A DNA stretch of 64,000 nucleotides, taken from the IMG/VR virus record IMGVR_UViG_3300029922_000001, positions 124,001-188,000 of that record; one strand, given 5' to 3'. Of this stretch, positions 1 through 54,268 are shown one piece after another. The notes under the pieces were generated by a model. It saw only the letters and a list, made by a program, of their open reading frames with translations. It made no database searches and was not told where the DNA came from. The translations under genes and the position numbers were made by a program. Every line of letters begins with the position of its first letter. The stretch's first letter is position 1.

Positions 1-3000
1 TTATCTCAAGCTGGAGCAACCGCATATATGGCAATTAATGCAGGTCCATTGCCTGGATTAAAGCAATTGGCGTATAGCATGAACGCTACACTAGATAACA
101 CGAATATTAATCCAATTTATGGATATGCAGTTAATTTAGACGCGGATAAGTTAGTTAATGATATTATCAGTTTTGATATTCAGCGCGGAACTGGTACTAC
201 AACTACTCCACCTACTACTTGGTCAGAACTTCCGCAACCTAATAATCCAGTGTCAGAAAGTGATACAAATTATCAGTTTAATGGACCAATGGTTAGTCGA
301 TATTTATATTTAGATACGTTACCTTTTAATGGCAAAACGCTCAATGATACATTTCAAACTAAAACGCCAATGTGGTATCGCATCAATCAAACATATAGCC
401 TTGGTTCTGCGTCAGGATCAAGATTAAGCCCTGCTTTTCAGCCTTCACGATATTCTGAGGGTAGTCCTATGCAAATGGCTCCTGGGAGCGAAGTAGGTAA
501 TTTGCCAACTACTGTTATTGCAAGAAGAATTAAAGATTATGTCTTGAGTGACCCTACTCAAGTTATGAACAGTTCACCGGTTGCTATTTTCATTGCTGAT
601 GATCCAAATCCTCCTGCTGGTAGTGCTACATTTACCTCTGGTGTATTTAATTTTAGTTTTGCCGCTCATACTGATGATGCCAATAATGTTGCTGAAACTT
701 ATTTAGTTGCAAGATTTTGGTTTCACCCAGTTGGCGTTACTTTTAATGCCCAAAATCCTCATCAATATAGAAGTGTTTCAGAGTTGATTTTTATTACAAA
801 TAGTGCTGGAGAACAGGTTATTAGCAGACAAAACCCTGCTGATGTTTCGCAATTAATGATTTCCCCAGCGTTGGGTACGGATGATGCCAATTACTCTATT
901 AACAAATACATTACTTCTGCTCAAGGAACGGGTGTTTCTAATAATGTGTGGACTTTCCCATCATCGTTTTCTCAACCTGGTAACACTTATAACCAAGGAA
1001 GATTAGTAATAGGTTTATATATTGTTACCGTTCCAAATCCTGGTGATACGACATTAAATTCAGTGAATTCAGCAACTTCTTCTGATTCATCTCCTAAAGT
1101 TTATATTACTGTTGATCCCACACGTATGAGTGTTACAACTACTATTGGTCAAACTATTACTGGTAACTTATTTCCAACTCAACCTAATTTATTTGGAACC
1201 GCAAATTATGAGTCCGTACCAGAACCTTTATATCTAAATGCTACTACATTAGCTGGCGCGACTTTAAACGCTACAAATAATTGGTACATTTACAATAATT
1301 CAGTTGCCACTCCTACTGTTAACAGCCCAGACACTGCTTTGAATAATTTAATGATAATGACATCTACAAATAACAATATTCAAGTTGCAATTCCGTACAA
1401 AAGTGTTCCTCTAACCTTTAGTTCTAATACAAGGGTGTATGCAGATTTTGTAACAAATAACCTTGTTCTCACTGATGGTAAAATAACTAACGGAACATGG
1501 ACTTTTAGTTTCACAGCAGATCAAGGTGCTGATACCGGATCTATTAGTTATAAATATCAATTTGAAGCATTTTTGTGTACAGCAGATGGCGTTTTAATCA
1601 ATTATATCTTGAAATCTCCTATTCAAGATTCAGCATCATATACGGTAGACTTAACATTACCTTATGCAATTGAATCTAATAATGTACAAATGGTAGTTAG
1701 AGTTTCAGGCTATCCATATTCCACAAATGGTACACCGATTGATTTATCAGTAATACAAACAGAATTAGGAAGTAAACCAGTTGGATTGAGAATTACAAAA
1801 TTCACAGTCTCAGCACACACATTAACCACAATGGATGTTAGTCAAACAGATAGTTTGTTATTGAGTATAGCCTCTTTTGAAGGTTTGCCAATGGTGCCAT
1901 CAGTGACATTTGGTGGTGAAAATTTTTGGGTTGATTTAGATCCAGACATGAATCAGCAAGTAGTTGTCACGTCCATTGGACCTATGTTACTATCTGCTAC
2001 CTTATTTAGTCCAACTTGGTTAGTTAATTTGCCTCAAGGTTGCGAAATAGAATACAATTCTTCAGTTTACACTGGAGATGTTGCAATTAGAACCGCTATT
2101 GGTAGTTCATCCACCAATGATACCACAGTAACAGCAGGTTATAACACTGATAGTCAACAAATTCATGTGGCACACTCCGTTGAACAATCTGCAATAACAG
2201 CAAGCACATTAGTTCAAACCGGTAAAGTTATTCAACTTATAAATATGAATAATCCTAATTTACAGGCTACCTCTACTGTAAATAACTCAGGGGCTGCTAT
2301 CTCTAAACTATCTAATCAATTTGTATCTGGATATAGATTGGCTACAGGTGGGGGTTACTCTCCATATCAATTACAAGGTGATAATCCATCTATTGTGCTA
2401 AATAATGGTAATAAGTATATTCAAATCGTTACTGAGGTTGATGAAGTTACTGGACCATCTAGTAGCATTGTTAGAAATAGAAATCTTGGGAATGTCAATT
2501 CTTGGGACAATAATAGCCCAATTGCTGCTGGTCAATTTGGAGATATCGCCAGGGTTGCCATTGATCTACAATATCCAACTGTAGTGGATTTGAATAATGG
2601 TTTTTTCTGTATAATCGGTTGGTTAGATAGTGGGTTTGCCGCTGCAAAATTTGTAAGTCCATACACTTCGAATCCACAAGGAATTGTTCCTCAAGGAATC
2701 CAGCTTATTATTGATGGTAATGGAACAACTCCACCTAACTGGGTTTTTACAAAAGGAGCAATGAATATACCCGTAGTTCAAACACCTTTAGGTTGTGCTT
2801 TAGGATCATCACAAAATATCATGGTGGTTTATCCTTTACTTGGAAATAATGGAATTTTATATTGCAAAGAGCTACAAGGTATGCAATCTGTAAAGCCTTC
2901 TAGGGAAATTGTATCTTTTCCTAAAATTATAAATAACAATTCTGACAGCTTAGCCATAAGATGCCCAAGTGTAGTATATGATGATTTAAGTGGGACTTAT

Positions 3001-3351
3001 ATATGTGCATTTTGGTGCAGTGGTAAAATATTTATTACTAGATTCTTTGATTTTATTGATACTTCCTTAAATCAATTGACACTTGTTGCTGGCAATAATG
3101 ATTTTACCAAGACTACTAATCCAGGTAATGCTTTCTTTTCAGTCGCCAATAAGAATTCTTATATTGTTAATAATGTAACATCTCCAGATGTTAGTGATGT
3201 TCTTTCTCAACGAGTTGGAATTACAATTACACCAAACTTACAAGATAAGAAAAATTCAATATTTGTATTTTATAAAAATAATTTAGATCAAGTATTTTGT
3301 AGAGAAGTTAGGCTTGGTATATCAGTTGGTGCCGCGATTCAAATTAATTAA
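1..3351 (+). CDS. Large putative virion structural protein, 5'-truncated by the window edge
   Basis: Frame is open from base 1 (first ATG at 28). N/T/S/P-rich, beta-rich composition; first gene of a run of giant co-oriented structural-type genes. No specific family recognised. Confidence 0.6.
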   Translation, partial: LSQAGATAYMAINAGPLPGLKQLAYSMNATLDNTNINPIYGYAVNLDADKLVNDIISFDIQRGTGTTTTPPTTWSELPQPNNPVSESDTNYQFNGPMVSRYLYLDTLPFNGKTLNDTFQTKTPMWYRINQTYSLGSASGSRLSPAFQPSRYSEGSPMQMAPGSEVGNLPTTVIARRIKDYVLSDPTQVMNSSPVAIFIADDPNPPAGSATFTSGVFNFSFAAHTDDANNVAETYLVARFWFHPVGVTFNAQNPHQYRSVSELIFITNSAGEQVISRQNPADVSQLMISPALGTDDANYSINKYITSAQGTGVSNNVWTFPSSFSQPGNTYNQGRLVIGLYIVTVPNPGDTTLNSVNSATSSDSSPKVYITVDPTRMSVTTTIGQTITGNLFPTQPNLFGTANYESVPEPLYLNATTLAGATLNATNNWYIYNNSVATPTVNSPDTALNNLMIMTSTNNNIQVAIPYKSVPLTFSSNTRVYADFVTNNLVLTDGKITNGTWTFSFTADQGADTGSISYKYQFEAFLCTADGVLINYILKSPIQDSASYTVDLTLPYAIESNNVQMVVRVSGYPYSTNGTPIDLSVIQTELGSKPVGLRITKFTVSAHTLTTMDVSQTDSLLLSIASFEGLPMVPSVTFGGENFWVDLDPDMNQQVVVTSIGPMLLSATLFSPTWLVNLPQGCEIEYNSSVYTGDVAIRTAIGSSSTNDTTVTAGYNTDSQQIHVAHSVEQSAITASTLVQTGKVIQLINMNNPNLQATSTVNNSGAAISKLSNQFVSGYRLATGGGYSPYQLQGDNPSIVLNNGNKYIQIVTEVDEVTGPSSSIVRNRNLGNVNSWDNNSPIAAGQFGDIARVAIDLQYPTVVDLNNGFFCIIGWLDSGFAAAKFVSPYTSNPQGIVPQGIQLIIDGNGTTPPNWVFTKGAMNIPVVQTPLGCALGSSQNIMVVYPLLGNNGILYCKELQGMQSVKPSREIVSFPKIINNNSDSLAIRCPSVVYDDLSGTYICAFWCSGKIFITRFFDFIDTSLNQLTLVAGNNDFTKTTNPGNAFFSVANKNSYIVNNVTSPDVSDVLSQRVGITITPNLQDKKNSIFVFYKNNLDQVFCREVRLGISVGAAIQIN

Positions 3352-3369
3352 AATCTGTATAAAACAATT

Positions 3370-6300
3370 ATGGATATTTTTGGTGCTTCATCAGATGATA
3401 CTGGCTTAGGTAATCAATACGTAGGCGAACCTCGAATTGCACGAGGATTATGTGTTATAGGTGGTTTAAATCAAAAAAGTACAGGCGGCATTCGAGGAAC
3501 TTTTGCTAAACTCACACCAGATGCAAAGGACGATTCAAGTGGTCAACAAATGAGTTTGAACTATTATATAGATAATCAAAATCGCCACAAAAACTCTAAA
3601 GAGACTACAACAATGGGACCAGAAGGTGGATATGGTTTATATGTTAATAATGCTTGTGGTGCGCCAATGTCCACTTTTGTATTTGGTGGAATATCTCCAG
3701 CAAGCATGGAGGCGAATCATCCTGTATTAAATCTTATTCAAGGACCACCATCTTCACAAAAATGTACATTTTCTGATGGCTCTATTCCCTATTATGATTC
3801 ACCTTATATAAATTTTAGTTATCAACCACAACAATATGGATCTACAGAGCAAGACATTGTGGACGATAGCGGTTTAGTAAACTTTAATGCATATTACATT
3901 AATAATAATCCACTTATTCCAACAATGCACAGTAATGGAATAACTTCTAATGGTGCTGCATTCGATTTATATTCGGCTTCTAAACCTTTAATGACTTATA
4001 ATATATGGCAGATAAATTATCCGTCAAGATTTCGAACATCAACCTTTGATATTAAAAATTATATTGAATATTCTCAAGATTTTGGTCCAATCATTAATAC
4101 GGCTACTGCATCCGCTACGGCATTAGCATATGATGGACCGATAATAAATCAATTTATATCAGAGAGGGGCGCTAAAGTTTCAGTATCTACACCTAAAGAT
4201 TTTGTTACCGTTGAAAGATTATATCCTATTAGTAATGATTTATTGTATTCTAATTTTCAAACAAACCCAGTGTTATCATATTACAGTTTAGTTAATTGTG
4301 ATGATGGTACACTAGATGCGCCATCTGCGATACCTGTTAGCATGACTGGCGCACAGAATTGCGGCTTTCAAATACACTTTGAGTGTTCTGGTATAGATTC
4401 TTCATATTCAGCATCAACAGGATCAGTTGCACCAAGTATCTCAATAAACTGGGGAGATCAAAATGTTCAATCAGCTACTTCTATTAATCAATTCCAACTT
4501 ATAATAAGTAGCCAAGGTACAGAATTAAGATATTTTAATCCTACCAAACAAATATATAACGTTGCGACTAATGAAGGCACACCAACTCCTGTGGACGCAA
4601 GATGGGTAAAGATTAAACTTCCAAATGGTAAATCTTTACTGCCTAATTCAGTAAGTTTTTCAGTATATGTTCATTATGCTGGACCTTATATGTTTGTTGG
4701 ATTTGGTGATTTAGGAAACTCTAGCGATGTTCAATGGTACTCACTAGGTCCTGTAGACAATGATGCTCAACAAAAAGGACAAAAGCTTAATTTAATGATC
4801 AGTGATCAGGCGACTATAGTTATTGGTATAGGGTACATGACTGCCCTTTTTCAATATGGTCCAATGACATTTAAGAATTATAATAAACAAAATATTACCA
4901 ACGCTACATCTATTGTCAATAAAGAATATTTAAATTATTTTGATTTTACGTTTACAGCCCCTGGAGACAAACAACAATATTTAGACACTAAGTTAATACA
5001 AAAAAACTTTTATAGTTTGGCATATACTGGGTTAACAAATACTACGAATGCAAAAGACACAAATATGAGTTATGCTCCAGACTGGAGAAATGCGACAAAT
5101 AATCAATTTTCTTTTGTTTGGAGAACGCCAATTACATTACTCCCAACTGGAGCAAGCCAGGTTGATCAAGTAGACCCATTGTATTATATTCAAGGAACAC
5201 TTCAATATAATACAACTTTTGAGGGACCTGTGTTTTACGAAATAACAAATAATATTACCCCATCTATACAGCCATTGCCGCCTTATATACCTTTAAATAT
5301 CAATGCTGGTAATAGGGTTATTGGTAGCACAACCAATGGAACAGATCAATATAATCCAAATTCATTAATAAATAATTTTTCATGGGGAGATATAAGCACT
5401 TATCTTACAAGGTGGAACATGTCTTATGCTTGTGAAGATAATGCAAATAGTTCATATTTATCAATGAGTGGGTCTGCTACATTTAAAGATATGGGATTAG
5501 ACATCCTTGGTAGAAAAATACTTACTGCTCTTGATGGTAACAGGATGACTATTTCTTTAGGTGCTGGTTATACTACTGATTATCCAGTTATATTTGGTCA
5601 AGGAGTAATAACTAAAGTTTCCACAGAAAGAGATGGAACTGGAACAATAACAACAATATCATTTGAAGATATTGGTACTTATTTACTAAGACACTGTAAA
5701 TTTAAAGATCCTTATATTTTTAGTGGTATGAAATATTGCCGTATTATACAAAGTATCTTAACTATACTTGGTTTTGATAAATATTATTCACAAAGACCAA
5801 ATTCCGTAAACAGTGCTTGGTCACAGGCTATGACATTAAGAGCTAATGCTTCTGGTTTACCTACTTCAATTAAGGGAGGTTCCATTCGTGTGGATTCTAA
5901 CACGGTGCCCTATAGTGTAATGAAAACTTTTTTACAGCTTATTATTGAAAAAGGTGCAACTCCTATATTTTGGTGGGACTGCGTTGATCAACTTTTCCGT
6001 ACTGAATGGAGGCAAGCTCCTGAATTTTTGGAAACTTTATATTTTGCCGGTTATAATAGTGGAAATAATAATGCATTATTACCCAACACTCAAAACACTC
6101 CAGACGATATTGTAAACAATTTAAATAGAGATTGGCAACACGGTGTGCTTGTTAAATCTTGGAAGTCAGACGTACAATATCAAAACTATATATATAAGCT
6201 TACCATTTGGGCTAAGGATTGTATTGGTAAATTAATGTCTTATAATTATTATGCTCCAAATGCTATTTCTCAAGACGTTTGGAATAAACTAAATAATTTA

Positions 6301-46843: not shown

Positions 46844-46880
46844 AACAAAAAAGAGGGATTCTATTCCCTCTTTTTTTGTT
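46844..46880. terminator. Bidirectional terminator between convergent genes
   Basis: AACAAAAAAGAGGGA...TCCCTCTTTTTTTGTT inverted repeat with A and T tails. Confidence 0.85.
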
Positions 46881-47287
46881 TATTTATTTTTCTTCTTAGT
46901 TTTCTTTTCTTCTTTTGGAGTTTCGTATCCCAAAGCTGCCATTTCCTTTTCAGTATTACGATTAATTGCTGCTTCAACTGAGAACTTCTCACCGTATCTA
47001 GCTTTTAGCTTGGCAATATTCGCATCTAAGATTTTATCAAAATCAAAATTAGAAGCATCGCATAAAATAGCGGTATACCACATTAAGTCTCCGACTTCCT
47101 CAAAAAGATTTTCGTAATCTAGTGGTTTTTTGTAATAAATATGCTTTTTCATTTGATCTAAGAGTTCCGCAGATTCGGTACATAGACCAATGACAGCATG
47201 AAGTTGACGAATAGATGTTTTGTCATCAATCAAATCAGGTACACTTTCTGTACGCTTACAATTTTCGATATAGGTTTTAAATTCCAT
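46880..47287 (-). CDS. MazG-like all-alpha NTP pyrophosphohydrolase
   Basis: GLCTESAELLD..KK, EEVGDLMWY, NIAKLKARY. Confidence 0.88.
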   Translation of the reverse strand: MEFKTYIENCKRTESVPDLIDDKTSIRQLHAVIGLCTESAELLDQMKKHIYYKKPLDYENLFEEVGDLMWYTAILCDASNFDFDKILDANIAKLKARYGEKFSVEAAINRNTEKEMAALGYETPKEEKKTKKKNK

Positions 47288-47320
47288 AGCTTATTGTAGG
47301 TTTTTTTGTATAAAAAGAGC

Positions 47321-47839
47321 ATGAGTGTGTATTTTGTTGATTCGGAATTTTACGAAGACGGAGAAATAATAGATTTATTATCCATTGCTATCGTGGCAAA
47401 TGATAATAAACAATATTACGCTGTGAATTCTGATTTTAACTTCACTAGAGCCAATAAAAATAAATGGCTCAAGGAAAACGTCTTGAAACATATTGATTTG
47501 GAGGATAAAACAAATCAAAGAAGTAAAAAACAAATTAAATCAGATATTTTAAAATTTATTGGTGATGATAAATCCCCGAAATTTGTGTCAGATTATTGCA
47601 GCTATGATTATATTGTGTTATGTCAAATATTTGGTAAAATGATTGATCTGCCTGATAATTTTCCTATGTATTGTAATGATCTACAAATGTTAAAGAAGAT
47701 AGTTGGTGCTAAGGATTCTGAATTGCCAACTTTGCCAAACGAACATCATGCACTTAATGATGCCTGTCAAGTACGCGAACAATGGTTATTCTTAGAAAAG
47801 CGTTTTCAGGAAAAATTCAAACAAAAACTGGTTTTTTAA
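47321..47839 (+). CDS. DEDDh 3'-5' exoribonuclease (Rv2179c/RNase AS-like)
   Basis: YFVDSEFYEDG, WLKENVL, YDYIVLCQIFGKMIDLP, HHALNDA. Start at ATG 47321, 6 nt after TATAAA. Confidence 0.85.
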   Translation: MSVYFVDSEFYEDGEIIDLLSIAIVANDNKQYYAVNSDFNFTRANKNKWLKENVLKHIDLEDKTNQRSKKQIKSDILKFIGDDKSPKFVSDYCSYDYIVLCQIFGKMIDLPDNFPMYCNDLQMLKKIVGAKDSELPTLPNEHHALNDACQVREQWLFLEKRFQEKFKQKLVF

Positions 47840-47847
47840 GAATACCC

Positions 47848-47877
47848 TTGACAAACTTCAGAGATTGTGGATATAAT
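47848..47877 (+). promoter_or_regulatory. Consensus sigma70 promoter of the RNA array
   Basis: TTGACA (47848-47853), 18-nt spacer, TATAAT (47872-47877). Confidence 0.8.
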
Positions 47878-47886
47878 ATCAGTGTT

Positions 47887-47925
47887 ATGAAAACTATGGA
47901 CTTGAAACTTAAACGTAAGCGTTAA
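47887..47925 (+). CDS. Putative leader peptide MKTMDLKLKRKR
   Basis: 12 codons starting 9 nt after the -10 box; 4 Lys codons (3 AAA, 1 AAG); followed by alternative hairpins. Confidence 0.5.
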   Translation: MKTMDLKLKRKR

Positions 47926-48039
47926 TTTCTTCTCTCCCAAATTTTGCGGAGTGGAAGAATTCCTCTGCAAAAAGTCCATAATATTTTCCATCTTATTTAC
48001 TTATGTAGAGGTCATCGTGTGTAGTGATCTTTAATTTTT
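47895..48039 (+). promoter_or_regulatory. Attenuator-like structured leader
   Basis: TATGGACTT(47895)/AAGTCCATA(47972). TTTTGCGGAG(47942)/CTCTGCAAAA(47963) competes with CTTCTCTCC/GGAGTGGAAG. Hairpin TAGAGGTCAT/GTGATCTTTA plus ATTTTT at 48006-48039. Confidence 0.45.
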
Positions 48040-48046
48040 AGTATAT

Positions 48047-48117
48047 GGGGATGTAGCTCGACGGTCGAGTTAGAGCCTTTTAAGCTCAAGGCGTGGGTTC
48101 GATTCCCTCCGTCCTCA
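48047..48117 (+). tRNA. tRNA-Lys(TTT), atypical D arm
   Basis: Acceptor GGGGATG/CGTCCTC; anticodon arm GAGC-CTTTTAA-GCTC; T loop TTCGATT; no encoded CCA. Confidence 0.85.
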
Positions 48118-48127
48118 CCGAGAATAT

Positions 48128-48198
48128 GGGAAGTTAGTTCAATGGTAGAGCGGGAGAATCTAAATCTCCTAATGAGGGTTCGATTCCCTCACTTCCCA
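48128..48198 (+). tRNA. Amber suppressor-type tRNA (anticodon CTA)
   Basis: Acceptor GGGAAGT/ACTTCCC; D arm GTTC/GAGC; anticodon arm GGAGA-ATCTAAA-TCTCC; T arm GAGGG-TTCGATT-CCCTC. Confidence 0.88.
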
Positions 48199-48211
48199 CC
48201 GAGATAAATAT

Positions 48212-48284
48212 GGGAATAAAGCATAAAGGGTGATGCAGTTGGCTCTTAACCTTCAGAACCTGGGCTCGACCCCCGGTGTTCCCA
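48212..48284 (+). tRNA. Degenerate tRNA-Lys(CTT)
   Basis: Acceptor GGGAATA/TGTTCCC; loop CTCTTAA; anticodon stem with two T-T mismatches, A8 and T loop CTCGACC. Confidence 0.65.
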
Positions 48285-48294
48285 CGAGAAATAT

Positions 48295-48367
48295 GGGGAT
48301 ATAACTCAATTGGTAGAGTGGCAGACTCTTAATCTGTAAGTTTGGGGTTCAAGTCCCCATGTCCCTA
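48295..48367 (+). tRNA. tRNA-Lys(CTT)
   Basis: GGGGATA/TGTCCCT; ACTC/GAGT; GCAGA-CTCTTAA-TCTGT; TGGGG-TTCAAGT-CCCCA. Confidence 0.92.
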
Positions 48368-48376
48368 CGAGAGCAA

Positions 48377-48701
48377 TTTGAATTTTGGGAAGTTGGCTTA
48401 GAAACAGCTATCTTATAATGAGTGTCAAGTGGAATGCATCAGGACGAATATAGGTATGAGAAATCTGAATAATCTATCGTGCGCGGTAGATTAATACTGA
48501 AATTCGGTTGGTACTGATGTCGTGTCTCAGCTATCCCAGCATGAGGACGTAGAACCACAGGGGAAGGACAAGTGCAGTATTAATAATATGTTTGGTAGGC
48601 GAAGCTACCGAACTAAGTAGAGGAAGGTAAGGGATAGGATATTCTACAATGTTATTAATGACCCTTAGAGACTTTGGCGTAGTAGCACACCAAAATTCAA
48701 A
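48377..48701 (+). ncRNA. ~325-nt structured RNA containing a split mimic of 23S rRNA H43/H44 (GTPase-associated centre)
   Basis: Perfect 12-bp terminal helix TTTGAATTTTGG/CCAAAATTCAAA. 48387-48423 joined to 48677-48691 aligns without gaps to 23S nt 1054-1105 (reference recalled from memory). Several internal helices; same CGAGA trailer as the tRNAs. Confidence 0.8.
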
Positions 48702-48712
48702 ACGAGATGTAA

Positions 48713-48808
48713 GGGGGTATAGCTTAGTGGTTAAAGCTGGAGACTTTTGGAGTATTTCATGGAATATTGCAAAATCTCTAGACTAGGGTTCGATTCCCTG
48801 TGCCCCTA
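48713..48808 (+). tRNA. tRNA-Lys(TTT)-like with a 24-nt insert in the anticodon loop
   Basis: GGGGGTA/TGCCCCT; GCTT/AAGC; GGAGA-CTTTT-[48749-48772]-AA-TCTCT; TAGGG-TTCGATT-CCCTG. Confidence 0.75.
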
Positions 48809-48846
48809 CCGAGATTAAGACAAGTTTTATATGTATAAACACAAGT

Positions 48847-51908: not shown

Positions 51909-52703
51909 ATGAAACAAGATAAAGATGCTTTAGGCAACAGAATGAAGGATCATGAACACCGAACACGGATTTTACTTCCGCGTAGAACAAATACAATGAT
52001 TAGGCTTGATGGAAAAGCTTTTCATACCTTTACAAAAGGATTCAAACGTCCTTTTGATACGGATTTAATGAATATCATGAATCAAACAGCATTAGAAACA
52101 TGTTCTACAATTCAAGGTGCCAAGTTTGCTTATGTTCAATCTGATGAAATTACTATTTTGGTTACAGATTACGAAACTGATGCATGGTTTGATGGTAATA
52201 TCCAGAAGATGACATCAATTTCAGCTTCTTATGCAACATCTGCGTTCAATGCTCATTATGGTAAATACATTTACGATCAAAATCCTAGCGAGTTTGACCC
52301 CTTAAAGGTTAAAAAAGCTAATTTTGATAGCCGTGTATGGACTTTAGCTGATCCTAATGAAGTTATTAATGTTTTAATTTGGAGACAACAAGATTGTGTA
52401 AAAAATAGTATTTCTATGGCAGCACAATCAATGTTCTCTCAGAAAGAATTGCAAAATAAGCATTCTGACGACATGCAAGAGATGATGTGGCAAAAAGGCG
52501 TCAATTGGAATGATTATACTGTTGGCGAAAAGCGTGGTCGTTTTATCGAAAAGATTTCCACACAAAAGGATATCGAATACATAGATAAGCGAACTGGTGA
52601 AAAACATATCAAAGAAGGTGTTATTCGATCTAAATGGAAAGTCGTAGAACCACCAACTTTTTCAACAGACAAAGACTTTATTCGTCGTTTCATGCCCATT
52701 TAA
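51909..52703 (+). CDS. Thg1-like tRNA(His) guanylyltransferase / 3'-5' polymerase
   Basis: IRLDGKAFHTFT, AYVQSDEIT, WFDGNIQKM, FDSRV, WRQQDCVKNSI. Confidence 0.93.
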   Translation: MKQDKDALGNRMKDHEHRTRILLPRRTNTMIRLDGKAFHTFTKGFKRPFDTDLMNIMNQTALETCSTIQGAKFAYVQSDEITILVTDYETDAWFDGNIQKMTSISASYATSAFNAHYGKYIYDQNPSEFDPLKVKKANFDSRVWTLADPNEVINVLIWRQQDCVKNSISMAAQSMFSQKELQNKHSDDMQEMMWQKGVNWNDYTVGEKRGRFIEKISTQKDIEYIDKRTGEKHIKEGVIRSKWKVVEPPTFSTDKDFIRRFMPI

Positions 52704-53099: not shown

Positions 53100-54268
53100 A
53101 GGAATCTTAATATATACATAAGAATTTATATTTATGCTTATAAATAGATCTATTCAATATAGATTATATCCTAACAATAAACAAATTAAATTATTATCTA
53201 ATAATTTGGAAGGTTGTAGACTACTTTATAATCAAATGTTGAATCAAAGAAAAGAAGGATGGGAACAAGATAAGCAATCCTTTTCTTGTTATGATCAGCA
53301 AAAATATTTTAAAGATTATCTAGATAAACTAGAATATAATATTCATGCTCAAGTTAAACAAAATGTTGCCGTTAGAGTTGACTTAGCTTTTAAGGCTTTC
53401 TTTCGTAGAATTAAAAATAAAGAAAATCCAGGTTATCCTAGATTTAAATCTTTTGGTAGATATGATTCATTCACTTATCCTCAAACTGATTACGGATATA
53501 AAATTAAAGATAAACAAATATATTTATGTAAGATAGGTAATGTTAAAGTTGTTATTCATAAACAAATCACTGGATTTATCAAAACATGTACTATCAAGAA
53601 AGAAAGTGATAGATGGTTTGTTATTTTTACTTATGAAGCAGAATCAACATCTTATGAATCTTCTACTAATTTAGAGATTGGTATTGATGTAGGTTTAAAA
53701 TCTTTTGCAGTGTTCTCAGATAATACAACTATTGATAATCCTAGATTCTTTAAACAAGAAGAAAAGAATATTGGAAGATTACAAAGACGAAAAGAAAAAG
53801 CTAATGGTAATCAAAAACAAAAATTAAAGAAAGCTATTCAAAAACGTCATGCTAAAGTTAAAAATAAGAGAAAAGATTTTTGTCATAAGCTTTCGAGATC
53901 AATCGTCAATAAATATAAAATTATTTGCATTGAAGATTTAAACATTAATCAAATGAAAGAAAACATGAGATATTTATCAAAAAGTATTCATGATGCTTCT
54001 TGGAAACTATTCTTGAACTATCTAATCTATAAAGCGGAAGAAGCTGGTAGATTATTAATTCAAGTCAATCCTGCGTATACTACCCAGGATTGTAGTAAAT
54101 GTGGTTATAGAGTTAAAAAGAAGCTTTCAGATCGTATTCATAATTGTCCTAATTGTGGACTCTCTATGGATCGTGATCTAAATGCTTCCCTAAACATTTT
54201 GAGAATAGGATTATATTCTCTTGGTATTAAATCCATAGAAGATTCTTTTAATTAAGAATAGTAATCAC
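53100..54268 (+). mobile_element. Solo-TnpB (IS1341-like) element
   Basis: No TnpA. The 3' end AGAAG-ATTCTT-TTAATT-AAGAAT-AGTAATCAC resembles an IS605 right-end hairpin ending in TCAC (54265-54268). Left end not defined. Confidence 0.6.
53134..54255 (+). CDS. tnpB: TnpB RNA-guided endonuclease (IS200/IS605 OrfB), intact D-E-D triad
   Basis: HTH YRLYPN, GYPRFKS, IGIDVGL, ICIEDL, CSKC..CPNC, DRDLNASLNI. Confidence 0.95.
   Translation: MLINRSIQYRLYPNNKQIKLLSNNLEGCRLLYNQMLNQRKEGWEQDKQSFSCYDQQKYFKDYLDKLEYNIHAQVKQNVAVRVDLAFKAFFRRIKNKENPGYPRFKSFGRYDSFTYPQTDYGYKIKDKQIYLCKIGNVKVVIHKQITGFIKTCTIKKESDRWFVIFTYEAESTSYESSTNLEIGIDVGLKSFAVFSDNTTIDNPRFFKQEEKNIGRLQRRKEKANGNQKQKLKKAIQKRHAKVKNKRKDFCHKLSRSIVNKYKIICIEDLNINQMKENMRYLSKSIHDASWKLFLNYLIYKAEEAGRLLIQVNPAYTTQDCSKCGYRVKKKLSDRIHNCPNCGLSMDRDLNASLNILRIGLYSLGIKSIEDSFN

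What the first reader, a model, noticed from the sequence alone, without database searches (positions are those of the whole stretch)
48047..48808. Array made almost entirely of sequence-diverse tRNA-Lys variants
Seen: Lys(TTT), CTA (one base from CTT), degenerate Lys(CTT), canonical Lys(CTT) and Lys(TTT)+insert. The stems differ, and some lack normally invariant bases (G at 14 in the first; A8, C54 and a mismatched anticodon stem in the third). Established: tRNA-Lys is the target of PrrC and of PARIS AriB, and T5 escapes PARIS with a variant tRNA-Lys. Inference: a panel of cleavage-resistant replacements and/or decoy substrates, rather than codon-usage supplementation.
Basis: partly seen in the sequence, partly recalled or inferred. 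Interest (0 to 1): 0.75.

Follow-up and report, generated by a model that had tools for sequence, protein, structure and literature searches.

The report
Lysine-only tRNA operon of a megaphage
A 441-kb peat bacteriophage carries a strongly promoted operon made only of lysine-type tRNAs (plus a lysine-like stop-codon suppressor and an expressed RNA that copies part of 23S rRNA) and also its own lysyl-tRNA synthetase. The virus therefore appears to bring a complete lysine-decoding kit, but whether that kit is there to beat tRNA-cutting host defences is still untested.

Summary
Rfam finds five tRNAs at 48047-48810: UUU, CUA, CUU (A8, C54, two U.U in the anticodon stem), CUU, and UUU with a 24-nt insert.

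- A 343-nt structured RNA lies between tRNA 4 and tRNA 5. Part of it copies 23S rRNA helix 43/44, and it is the only part of the locus seen in three metatranscriptomes.
- A perfect sigma-70 promoter and a conserved structured leader precede the array.
- The phage encodes its own class II LysRS, about 93 kb away.

The same Lys-only operon sits in the same gene neighbourhood in three related phages, with 2-5 members each. In those relatives:
- Stems covary.
- G14 of tRNA 1 is kept in its orthologues.
- The CUA tRNA is an old lineage, not a fresh CUU mutant.
- The 24-nt insert recurs at the same site, with compensatory changes.

Between two near-identical genomes, some tRNA slots hold only 70-79% similar tRNAs, yet both keep 2 UUU + 2 CUU + 1 CUA.

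Best reading: this is a self-contained lysine-decoding module. The anti-nuclease "panel" idea is plausible and fits several features, but it is untested because the host is unknown. Codon supplementation explains UUU only. No TAG recoding was found.

The parts
47848..47877 (+). Consensus sigma-70 promoter, TTGACA-18 nt-TATAAT (12 of 12 matches), driving the operon
   Evidence: It is conserved in L039, L042 and L044. It is one of only 8 such perfect sites in the 441-kb genome.
47879..48046 (+). Structured 5' leader RNA. The core (~47895-47983) is a three-helix fold closed by UAUGGACUU/AAGUCCAUA. The blocks AAACGUAAGCGUUAA and CCUCUGCA are invariant.
   Evidence: Conserved in 4 phages whose neighbouring exoRNase is only 55-59% identical. 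No Rfam match. No paralogue elsewhere in the genome.
48047..48119 (+). t1: tRNA-Lys(UUU) with G14, C21, C31-G39 and a U50.U64 mismatch
   Evidence: Its orthologues, L039 4948-5022 and L042 3097-3168, keep G14 and the odd D arm, and the 31-39 pair covaries.
48128..48200 (+). t2: canonical class I tRNA with a CUA anticodon (amber suppressor), G1-C72, A73 and A31-U39; Lys-like body
   Evidence: Its nearest relatives are Lys(UUU) of L010/L039 and the CUA tRNAs of L039 and L042 (77% identity; the 5' half matches the L042 copy at 22 of 24 positions).
48212..48286 (+). t3: atypical tRNA with a CUU anticodon, A8, G21, C54 and U.U mismatches at 28-42 and 29-41
   Evidence: 45 bits; ARAGORN misses it. 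The homologue in L010/L039 shares A8 and both mismatches but has a canonical T loop. Absent from L042 and L044.
48295..48369 (+). t4: canonical tRNA-Lys(CUU)
   Evidence: 100% identical in L010/L039. The L042 orthologue (3177-3249) has the same anticodon arm and compensatory acceptor and T stems.
48370..48712 (+). 343-nt structured RNA closed by a 12-bp terminal helix (48377-48388 with 48693-48704) and followed by the same CGAGA trailer as the tRNAs
   Evidence: Fold. With the L010 copy: 103 pairs, 3 compensatory, 7 one-sided, 0 broken. Contigs of three metatranscriptomes cover only 48408-48662. No Rfam family reaches threshold.
48386..48441 (+). Module resembling 23S rRNA helix 42 top/H43/H44 (L11-binding GTPase-associated centre)
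   Evidence: cmscan LSU_rRNA_bacteria positions 1094-1147, 14 bits, E 0.028. The L010 copy matches E. coli 23S ~1049-1084 at 91.7% over 36 nt. The H43-like hairpin is kept by compensatory changes. H44 is poorly kept.
48713..48810 (+). t5: tRNA-Lys(UUU) carrying a 24-nt insert
   Evidence: The orthologue L044 4733-4828 is also 96 nt.
48749..48772 (+). 24-nt insert after nt 36 of t5. It forms a 7-bp hairpin, and its 3' end pairs with U33-U36, burying the anticodon in a continuous helix.
   Evidence: z = -4.6 for the arm. The L044 orthologue, Lys(CUU), has a 24-nt insert at the same place with compensatory changes in the hairpin.
47306..47839 (+). Rv2179c/RNase AS-like 3'-5' exoribonuclease directly upstream (conserved neighbour of the operon)
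   Evidence: The same neighbour is present in L039, L042 and L044.
46880..47287 (-). MazG-like nucleotide pyrophosphohydrolase (conserved neighbour)
51909..52703 (+). Thg1-family 3'-5' nucleotidyltransferase (tRNA-His guanylyltransferase-like), a conserved neighbour 3 kb downstream
   Evidence: phrog_4717, 276 bits. Also present in L039 and L044.

Best explanation
The locus is a single, strongly transcribed operon. Its order is: consensus sigma-70 promoter, conserved structured leader, four tRNAs, a 343-nt RNA, and a fifth tRNA. Together with the phage's own class II lysyl-tRNA synthetase it forms a self-contained lysine-decoding module.

Composition of the module:
- Both lysine isoacceptors, UUU and CUU, each in two sequence-distinct copies.
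- A lysine-like amber suppressor (CUA).

Inferred working:
1. Host RNA polymerase transcribes the operon early in infection.
2. The tRNAs and the embedded RNA are released at a common trailer signal, CGAG[A/U], which follows every tRNA of this genome.
3. The host adds CCA.
4. The phage LysRS (and/or the host's) charges the tRNAs. Phage translation of AAA/AAG (6.8% of its codons) then no longer depends on the host's tRNA-Lys pool.

The sequence diversity comes from exchange of whole tRNA cassettes between related phages, not from decay.

Why lysine was singled out is not shown. The two live reasons are that host tRNA-Lys is scarce for an AT-rich phage, and that tRNA-Lys is a favourite target of host nucleases. 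They are not exclusive.

Shown: the genes, their conservation and covariation, the LysRS, the promoter, and expression of the embedded RNA.
Inferred: expression and charging of each tRNA, the amino acid inserted at UAG, the processing route, and the selective reason.
For: - Five tRNAs score above the Rfam threshold.
- They are the only Lys tRNAs in the genome.
- The promoter matches consensus at 12 of 12 positions.
- A Lys-only operon with the same promoter, leader and neighbours (MazG or dUTPase, exoRNase, Thg1) occurs in L039/L010, L042 and L044.
- Across 13 array tRNAs, 13 of 20 cloverleaf pairs show double compensatory changes.
- An intact LysRS is present: NF001756 at 474 bits, covering 6-487 of 488 model positions.
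- LysRS relatives at 75% and 60% identity occur in the same sequencing runs as L039 and L044, whereas cellular LysRS is only ~45% identical.
- A TyrRS plus two tRNA-Tyr show the same pairing logic.
- No GlnRS/GluRS-type enzyme was found.
- The CUA tRNAs share GGG at positions 1-3, A73 and A31-U39 with the Lys tRNAs. In E. coli the 31-39 pair decides between LysRS and GlnRS for amber suppressors (PMC1483225).
- The CGAG trailer follows 29 of 29 tRNAs and the 343-nt RNA.
- The embedded RNA is present in three metatranscriptomes in which the flanking genes are absent.
- Part of the leader/t1-t4 stretch is held by two further RNA runs.
- Huge phages are known to pair their own aaRS with their own tRNA variants (PMC7162821).
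Against: - No read data show mature tRNAs, CCA addition, charging, or removal of the t5 insert.
- t3 (A8, C54, a 3-bp effective anticodon stem) may not decode at all.
- t1 has C31-G39, which lowers lysine acceptance 100-fold with E. coli LysRS (PMC1483225).
- LysRS lies 93 kb from the operon, so the link rests on co-occurrence.
- The amber suppressor has no visible use. The genome uses the standard code, and same-frame ORF pairs joined by TAG are separate genes.
- The role of the 343-nt RNA and of the leader in a 'decoding' module is unexplained.
Confidence: 0.6

Rival explanations
1. Counter-defence panel. The copies are versions of tRNA-Lys that host tRNA-Lys-directed nucleases (PrrC-, AriB-, RloC-like) cannot cut. 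Some, such as t3 or the anticodon-masked t5, act as decoys or protected reserves. Several different anticodon stems are kept as a hedge.
For: - Same-anticodon paralogues have different anticodon stems: UUU has AGAGC/GCUCA versus GGAGA/UCUCU, and CUU has GUUGG/CCUUC versus GCAGA/UCUGU.
- AriB cuts between nt 40 and 41, and changes at 39 and 41 give resistance (PMC12409363). t1 has G39/U41, t3 has C39/U41, and the others have U41 instead of A41.
- tRNA slots differ by 21-30% between genomes that are 99-100% identical in neighbouring blocks, while the anticodon set stays 2 UUU + 2 CUU + 1 CUA.
- The tRNA repertoire does not follow codon frequency.
- The isotypes for which the phage carries both enzyme and tRNAs, Lys and Tyr, are targets of known anticodon nucleases and retron effectors (PMC11555353, PMC10264068).
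- Three to four RNA-ligase genes suggest RNA repair.
- The t5 insert hides the anticodon loop in a helix and is conserved.
Against: - No nuclease, host, or host tRNA is known, so no determinant can be compared.
- E. coli rules may not transfer to this host.
- Within the tA and t4 orthologue families the anticodon arm is the most conserved part.
- The arrays of L042 and L044 have fewer members (4 and 2), and L042 has no atypical or insert-bearing copy.
- t3 is found only in the two closest genomes.
Confidence: 0.3
2. Plain codon-usage supplementation. An AT-rich phage (34% GC) in a GC-richer host tops up the tRNAs that read A-ending codons, AAA among them.
For: - AAA is the third most used codon, at 47.9 per thousand.
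- The phage's other tRNAs are enriched for U34 readers of A-ending codons: Leu UAA x2, Arg UCU, Ile UAU, Thr UGU, Ser UGA and Pro UGG.
Against: - It does not explain two CUU tRNAs (AAG is the minor Lys codon at 20.6 per thousand), a CUA suppressor, an insert-bearing duplicate of UUU, a dedicated leader, or a phage LysRS.
- There is no tRNA for Glu UUC or Gln UUG, although GAA and CAA are heavily used.
- Cys, the rarest amino acid, has two tRNAs.
Confidence: 0.2
3. Duplication debris. One or two working Lys tRNAs plus decaying tandem copies (t1, t3, t5), tolerated in a huge genome.
For: - t3 scores lowest. The window's copy has three T-arm changes against zero in the adjacent t4.
- t1 has a T-stem mismatch.
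- The repeated junction CGAGA...AUAUGGG could drive unequal crossing-over.
Against: - G14 and the odd D arm of t1 are kept in three phages, with covariation at 31-39.
- The t5 insert keeps its length, position and hairpin through compensatory changes in a phage whose exoRNase is only 55% identical.
- No array member has lost the cloverleaf.
Confidence: 0.1
4. The tRNAs mainly serve as processing punctuation that releases the embedded 343-nt RNA and the leader, which are the real products.
For: - The 343-nt RNA is the only part seen in metatranscriptomes.
- It ends with a 12-bp helix, one base, and then the tRNA trailer CGAGA.
Against: - L042 and L044 have the Lys operon without this RNA.
- Standard RNA-seq under-samples tRNAs, so their absence from the contigs says little.
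Confidence: 0.05

Closest known systems
Phage T5 tRNA-Lys(UUU) variant that neutralises PARIS (AriA/AriB); T5 tRNA-Thr and tRNA-Asn variants
   Same: A phage-encoded tRNA-Lys whose anticodon stem differs from the usual one. It sits in a tRNA cluster and can replace a host tRNA that immunity destroys (PMC11464382, PMC12409363).
   Different: In T5 there is one copy per isotype within a mixed array, and resistance was mapped to U39A/A41C and shown by experiment. Here there are four Lys copies plus a suppressor in a Lys-only operon, together with a phage LysRS. No nuclease is known and nothing has been tested.
Huge-phage translation repertoires (tRNAs plus aminoacyl-tRNA synthetases; Al-Shayeb et al. 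2020, PMC7162821)
   Same: A genome over 200 kb with tens of tRNAs distinct from the host's, its own aaRS proposed to charge its own tRNA variants, and RNA ligases proposed to repair cleaved tRNAs.
   Different: Here the pairing is specific. Of the families searched, only LysRS and TyrRS were found. They are matched by a Lys-only operon and two tRNA-Tyr, and the operon has its own conserved leader.
Lak megaphage tRNAs with 'enigmatic introns' and CUA suppressor tRNAs (Devoto et al. 2019, PMC6784885)
   Same: A megaphage with short, conserved inserts in tRNA anticodon loops and an amber suppressor tRNA.
   Different: Lak phages recode TAG, whereas this phage uses the standard code. Here the insert lies after nt 36, not at 37/38, and always pairs with its own anticodon. 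Six tRNAs in this genome have such an insert.
T4 response to PrrC (Pnkp + Rnl1 repair of cleaved tRNA-Lys)
   Same: Lysine decoding is the contested resource, and the phage carries RNA-ligase-family genes.
   Different: The T4 response repairs the host tRNA and does not replace it. PrrC was not sought in this genome.
Large phage-associated ncRNAs next to tRNA genes (GOLLD, ROOL; PMC12286853)
   Same: A large structured RNA of unknown function embedded among phage tRNA genes.
   Different: There is no Rfam match to GOLLD, ROOL or any other family. This RNA is much shorter (343 nt) and contains a 23S rRNA H43/H44-like module.

Membership tests
tRNA (Rfam RF00005) | Cloverleaf sequence/structure score above the gathering threshold (29 bits) | tested here: met
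   All five score 45.0-68.9 bits. The family-wide consensus cloverleaf has 13 of 20 covarying pairs.
tRNA-Lys | Anticodon UUU or CUU in a 7-nt loop with U33 and A37 | tested here: met
   t1, t3 and t4 meet this directly. t5 meets it only after removal of 24 nt. The L044 orthologue gives CUCUUAA by the same removal, which supports Lys over ARAGORN's Gln call.
tRNA-Lys | Discriminator A73 and U35 (the main bacterial LysRS identity elements) | tested here: met
   All 13 insert-free array tRNAs have A73 and U35.
tRNA-Lys | Aminoacylation with lysine | not testable with these tools
   Needs LysRS assays. t1 carries C31-G39, an antideterminant for E. coli LysRS (PMC1483225).
Amber suppressor tRNA | CUA anticodon in an otherwise canonical tRNA | tested here: met
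   t2 scores 66.7 bits with loop AUCUAAA. CUA lineage members occur in L039 and L042, the latter with an 8-nt loop.
Stop-codon-recoded phage (TAG as sense) | In-frame TAG in genes; ORF lengths increase when TAG is read as sense | tested here: not met
   No gain in long ORFs. The 10 TAG-joined ORF pairs are separate genes. TAG ends 19 of 286 long ORFs.
Nuclease-resistant phage tRNA (T5 tRNA-Lys type) | Differs from the host tRNA at the nuclease's determinants (nt 39 and 41 for AriB) | tested here: inconclusive
   Positions 39-41 read GCU (t1), CCU (t3) and UCU (t2, t4, t5), against UCA in E. coli tRNA-Lys (PMC12409363). The host and its tRNA are unknown.
Nuclease-resistant phage tRNA (T5 tRNA-Lys type) | Escapes cleavage and rescues infection | not testable with these tools
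   Needs experiment.
Protein-spliced tRNA intron (archaeal/eukaryal type) | Intron at 37/38 within a bulge-helix-bulge motif | tested here: not met
   The insert lies after nt 36. The fold is a continuous helix with 1-nt bulges.
Protein-spliced tRNA intron (archaeal/eukaryal type) | Splicing endonuclease (EndA) and ligase (RtcB) available | tested here: not met
   No PF01974 or PF01139 match in the phage. Rnl2-type RNA ligases are present. Host enzymes are unknown.
23S rRNA GTPase-associated centre (H43/H44, L11 site) | Sequence and fold of both hairpins and their junction | tested here: inconclusive
   H43 and the junction match at 33 of 36 nt in the L010 copy. The LSU local hit (14 bits) is far below gathering (50 bits). 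H44 is interrupted by 5 extra nt and its stem is not kept.
Known large phage ncRNAs (GOLLD, ROOL, tmRNA, RNase P, group I intron) | Match to the Rfam covariance model | tested here: not met
   No match at E <= 10 on 48360-48720 apart from the LSU fragment.

The most novel reading that the evidence does not exclude
The operon is a counter-immunity cassette built around lysine decoding, with these parts:
- An orthogonal phage LysRS charges non-canonical tRNA-Lys species (G14, A8, C31-G39 types) that host nucleases and perhaps host LysRS ignore.
- One copy is stored as an anticodon-masked 'pro-tRNA', which a phage nuclease/ligase activates by removing a 24-nt insert at a non-canonical site.
- The amber suppressor inserts lysine.
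- The co-transcribed abundant RNA uses a 23S H43/H44 mimic to soak up a factor that acts on the ribosomal GTPase centre. That factor could be L11, RelA-type stress signalling, or a toxin such as the H44-directed ADP-ribosyltransferase described in PMC8661411.
Probability: 0.12. Interest if true: 0.9.

Novelty: new variant of a known kind. Interest (0 to 1): 0.68.

Why it matters
Phage tRNAs have recently been recognised as weapons against tRNA-cutting immunity, but almost all the evidence comes from coliphages with one variant per isotype. This locus is a natural case in which a virus devotes a whole promoter-leader-operon, plus a synthetase, to a single amino acid, and does so across a clade.

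That makes three open questions directly testable with a handful of transcripts and one enzyme:
- Do huge-phage synthetases form private pairs with their own odd tRNAs?
- Are the 'enigmatic' megaphage tRNA inserts removed, and by what?
- What is an amber suppressor for in a phage that uses the standard code?

The embedded, highly expressed RNA with a copy of the L11/thiostrepton region of 23S rRNA is, as far as the library searches here show, undescribed. It could point to a new way of manipulating the ribosome's GTPase centre.

Tried and rejected
- **Close relatives through single flanking proteins or exact DNA words:** nothing useful. The ATP-grasp and exoRNase patterns in viral contigs gave no hits. 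The t2 3' half gave none. A T-arm + trailer pattern found only unrelated huge-phage arrays. The RNA core in metagenome contigs found only the same phage. The t4 anticodon arm gave a chance hit, L014. Relatives came instead from protein homologues plus their contigs.
- **The genome search 'relatives':** not available for a virus record.
- **TAG recoding:** rejected.
- **Isotype assignment of the CUA tRNAs by nearest neighbour among 91 tRNAs of other phages:** uninformative, with all identities <= 73%.
- **Phage-encoded splicing endonuclease, RtcB, CCA-adding enzyme, and class Ia, Ic and IIb synthetases:** none found.
- **Extended homology of the 343-nt RNA to 23S beyond ~60 nt:** not above shuffled controls.
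- **Paralogues of the leader or of the 343-nt RNA elsewhere in the genome:** none.
- **Conservation of t3/t4/RNA in L010 as proof of purifying selection:** rejected. The two genomes are a mosaic, with 99-100% identical blocks next to the array.
- **tRNA coverage or splice joints over t5 in the metatranscriptomes:** none. This is uninformative for tRNAs.
- **Host:** not identified. The best cellular hits are ~45% identical (Nostocales for the ATP-grasp; Armatimonadota and cyanobacteria for LysRS).
Full report
**What is there.**
The window is bases 124001-188000 of a 441,498-bp IMG/VR virus record from peat (33.9% GC). The record is a bacteriophage: it has a tmRNA, sigma-70-type promoters, bacterial-type LysRS and TyrRS, and a major-head-protein homologue. 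It uses the standard genetic code.

Rfam finds five tRNAs at 48047-48810, scoring 45-69 bits against a threshold of 29. ARAGORN finds four of them and misreads the fifth as Gln.
- Anticodons are UUU (t1), CUA (t2), CUU (t3), CUU (t4) and UUU (t5).
- t5 has 24 extra bases after nt 36 (48749-48772). Removing them gives the loop CUUUUAA.
- No other Lys tRNA exists in the genome.

(a) A 12-of-12 consensus promoter at 47848-47877 is followed by a ~165-nt leader with a conserved three-helix fold.

(b) The 343 bases between t4 and t5 are a structured RNA.
- It has a 12-bp terminal helix.
- Against the one available homologue it shows 103 predicted pairs, of which 3 are compensatory, 7 changed on one side, and 0 broken.
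- In three metatranscriptomes from different studies (two peat, one rhizosphere), the only contigs on a 1.8-kb stretch cover 48408-48662 with 0-1 mismatches. The flanking genes are not seen. The RNA is therefore abundant relative to phage mRNAs.
- Its 5' part (48386-48441) matches bacterial 23S rRNA at the top of H42, H43 and the junction to H44, which is the L11/thiostrepton region.
- The relative's copy is 33 of 36 identical to E. coli 23S ~1049-1084.
- H44 is poorly kept, and the remaining ~270 nt resemble nothing in Rfam or 23S.

(c) Every tRNA of the genome (29 of 29), and also the 343-nt RNA, is followed by CGAG[A/T] lying 0, 1 (C) or 3 (CCA) bases after the discriminator. This is usually followed by A/T-rich sequence and AUAUG before the next gene. 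It is a genome-wide trailer signal, presumably for processing.

(d) The phage encodes an intact class II LysRS (genome 264815-266290) and a TyrRS. It has no class Ia, Ic or IIb synthetase, no CCA-adding enzyme, no EndA and no RtcB. It has three to four Rnl2-family RNA ligases, one fused to an HNH domain.

**Relatives.**
Homologues of the flanking ATP-grasp and exoRNase led to three related phages with the same neighbourhood: MazG or dUTPase, exoRNase, operon, then Thg1.

| Phage | exoRNase identity | Operon content |
|---|---|---|
| L039/L010 | 98% | promoter, leader, a ~41-codon ORF, UUU, UUU, t3-like CUU, CUU, the 343-nt RNA, CUA |
| L042 | 59% | promoter, leader, the small ORF, UUU, UUU, CUU, and a CUA-containing tRNA with an 8-nt loop |
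| L044 | 55% | promoter, leader, CUU with a 24-nt insert, UUU |

- All arrays are lysine-type only.
- LysRS relatives (75% and 60% identity) occur in the same sequencing runs as L039 and L044. Cellular LysRS is only ~45% identical.
- Across 13 insert-free array tRNAs, the consensus cloverleaf has 13 of 20 pairs with double compensatory changes. GGG at positions 1-3, A73 and U35 are shared by UUU, CUU and CUA members alike.

**Orthologue families.**
- The t1 lineage keeps G14 and its odd D arm in three phages, while the 31-39 pair covaries.
- The tA and t4 lineages keep the anticodon arm unchanged while the acceptor and T stems covary.
- The CUA lineage (t2, L039 5533-5606, L042 3300-3371) is old. 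The 5' half of t2 matches the L042 copy at 22 of 24 positions.
- t5 and the insert-bearing tRNA of L044 are both 96 nt. Each has a 24-nt insert at the same place, with a 7-bp hairpin kept by compensatory changes and a 3' end that pairs with the tRNA's own anticodon region (UUU in one, CUU in the other). This settles t5 as Lys, not Gln, and shows that the insert is selected.
- t3 is found only in the window and L039.

**Mosaic turnover.**
The window and L010/L039 are 99% identical over the first 270 nt of the ATP-grasp gene and 100% identical in t4. In contrast, the slots of t1, t2 and t5 hold tRNAs only 70-79% identical and in a different order. Both arrays still total 2 UUU + 2 CUU + 1 CUA. 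This looks like exchange of cassettes at the repeated junctions under selection for the anticodon set. It also means that the near-identity of t3 in the two genomes is no proof of purifying selection. The window's t3 in fact has three extra T-arm changes, including T54C.

**Interpretation.**
Best supported is a self-contained lysine-decoding module: the operon plus LysRS. This follows the idea already proposed for huge phages that their synthetases charge their own tRNA variants (PMC7162821).

The amber suppressor most likely inserts lysine. The reasons are:
- It has A73.
- It has A31-U39, the pair that favours LysRS over GlnRS for CUA tRNAs in E. coli (PMC1483225).
- It belongs to the Lys family.
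- The phage has no GlnRS.

Its purpose is unknown, because no TAG read-through was found. TAG ends only 19 of 286 long ORFs.

Codon supplementation fits the UUU copies. AAA is the third most used codon, and the phage's other tRNAs favour A-ending codons. It does not fit CUU x2, CUA, the masked duplicate, the dedicated leader or the LysRS. The repertoire also ignores the top codons AAT, GAA and GAT.

- The different anticodon stems of same-anticodon paralogues.
- Positions 39-41 that differ from the AriB site of E. coli tRNA-Lys (PMC12409363).
- The cassette turnover, and the Lys/Tyr focus.

However, the host, its tRNAs and its nucleases are unknown, and the anticodon arms of two orthologue families are conserved and not diversifying. 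I therefore rate it plausible (about 0.3) and not shown.

**The insert.**
Five further tRNAs of this genome carry 14-31-nt inserts whose 3' ends pair with their own anticodon region. Several of them duplicate an insert-free tRNA with the same anticodon, for example Cys GCA and Thr UGU. Such 'enigmatic introns' were reported in Lak megaphages (PMC6784885). Here the site (36/37) and the fold (a continuous helix, no bulge-helix-bulge) do not match protein-spliced introns, and no splicing endonuclease is encoded. Whether the inserts are removed is the key open question.

**Verdict.**
The locus is a new variant of known kinds (phage tRNA arrays, huge-phage synthetases, megaphage tRNA inserts). One component, the rRNA-mimicking expressed RNA, has no described counterpart that I could find.

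Noticed in passing
window 48370-48712 (GAC-like part 48386-48441): A 343-nt structured RNA sits inside the tRNA array. It is abundant in three metatranscriptomes and carries a copy of the 23S rRNA H43/H44 (L11/thiostrepton) region. It matches no Rfam family.
   Followed up: yes
window 47879-48046; L039 4559-4722; L042 2727-2885; L044 4577-4732: A conserved structured leader RNA lies between the promoter and the first tRNA. It is unique to the Lys operon and has invariant blocks AAACGUAAGCGUUAA and CCUCUGCA. Its function is unknown.
   Followed up: partly
whole genome; in the window at 48120, 48201, 48287, 48370, 48705, 48811: CGAG[A/T] follows the 3' end of all 29 tRNAs and of the 343-nt RNA, at 0, 1 or 3 nt after the discriminator. 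It is probably a processing signal. L042 shares it; L044 has CCA-A... instead.
   Followed up: partly
genome 245888-245993, 251433-251524 (L023 134-225), 253296-253394 (L023 1997-2095), 275381-275484 (L024 382-485), 389592-389681: Five more tRNAs carry 14-31-nt anticodon-loop inserts, each with a 3' end complementary to its own anticodon region. Several duplicate an insert-free tRNA with the same anticodon.
   Followed up: partly
genome 353602-353673 (L021 603-674): A second, unrelated CUA suppressor tRNA has G73 and an A8/U14 swap. It lies just downstream of a ZIP-transporter gene that ends in TAG.
   Followed up: partly
window 48219-48237; genome 353609-353627 and Thr(UGU) 253209-253282: The unusual D arm A8-A9-GCAU...AUGC-A recurs in t3, in the second CUA tRNA and in tRNA-Thr(UGU). 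A8 is therefore a recurring trait of this phage's tRNAs and not a sign of decay.
   Followed up: no
genome 264815-266290 (L015 516-1991); 310703-311899 (L020 704-1900): The phage encodes a LysRS and a TyrRS. These were the only aminoacyl-tRNA synthetases found among the families searched, and each is matched by two or more phage tRNAs.
   Followed up: yes
L016 287-1315; L017 127-1287; L018 571-1593; L019: There are three to four Rnl2-family RNA ligase genes. One is fused to an N-terminal HNH nuclease domain and one is of the DRB0094 type.
   Followed up: partly
L039 ~4724-4850; L042 ~2884-3007: A conserved ~41-codon ORF (starting MKLIKIPL) lies between the leader and the first tRNA in two relatives. 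It is absent from the window.
   Followed up: no
L042 3300-3371: A member of the CUA lineage has an 8-nt anticodon loop (ACUCUAAA). It could be a quadruplet or frameshift suppressor.
   Followed up: no
window 53134-54255: A TnpB/IS605 OrfB (Cas12f-like) gene lies 4 kb downstream of the array.
   Followed up: no
genome 7122, 16544, 171848, 320730, 354986, 361154, 388204, 389264: The genome has only eight perfect TTGACA-N16-19-[TC]ATAAT promoters. At least four of them sit just upstream of tRNA or tRNA-like loci.
   Followed up: no
genome 293574-293927: The phage encodes a tmRNA with a short atypical tag (GKSYAYVG).
   Followed up: no
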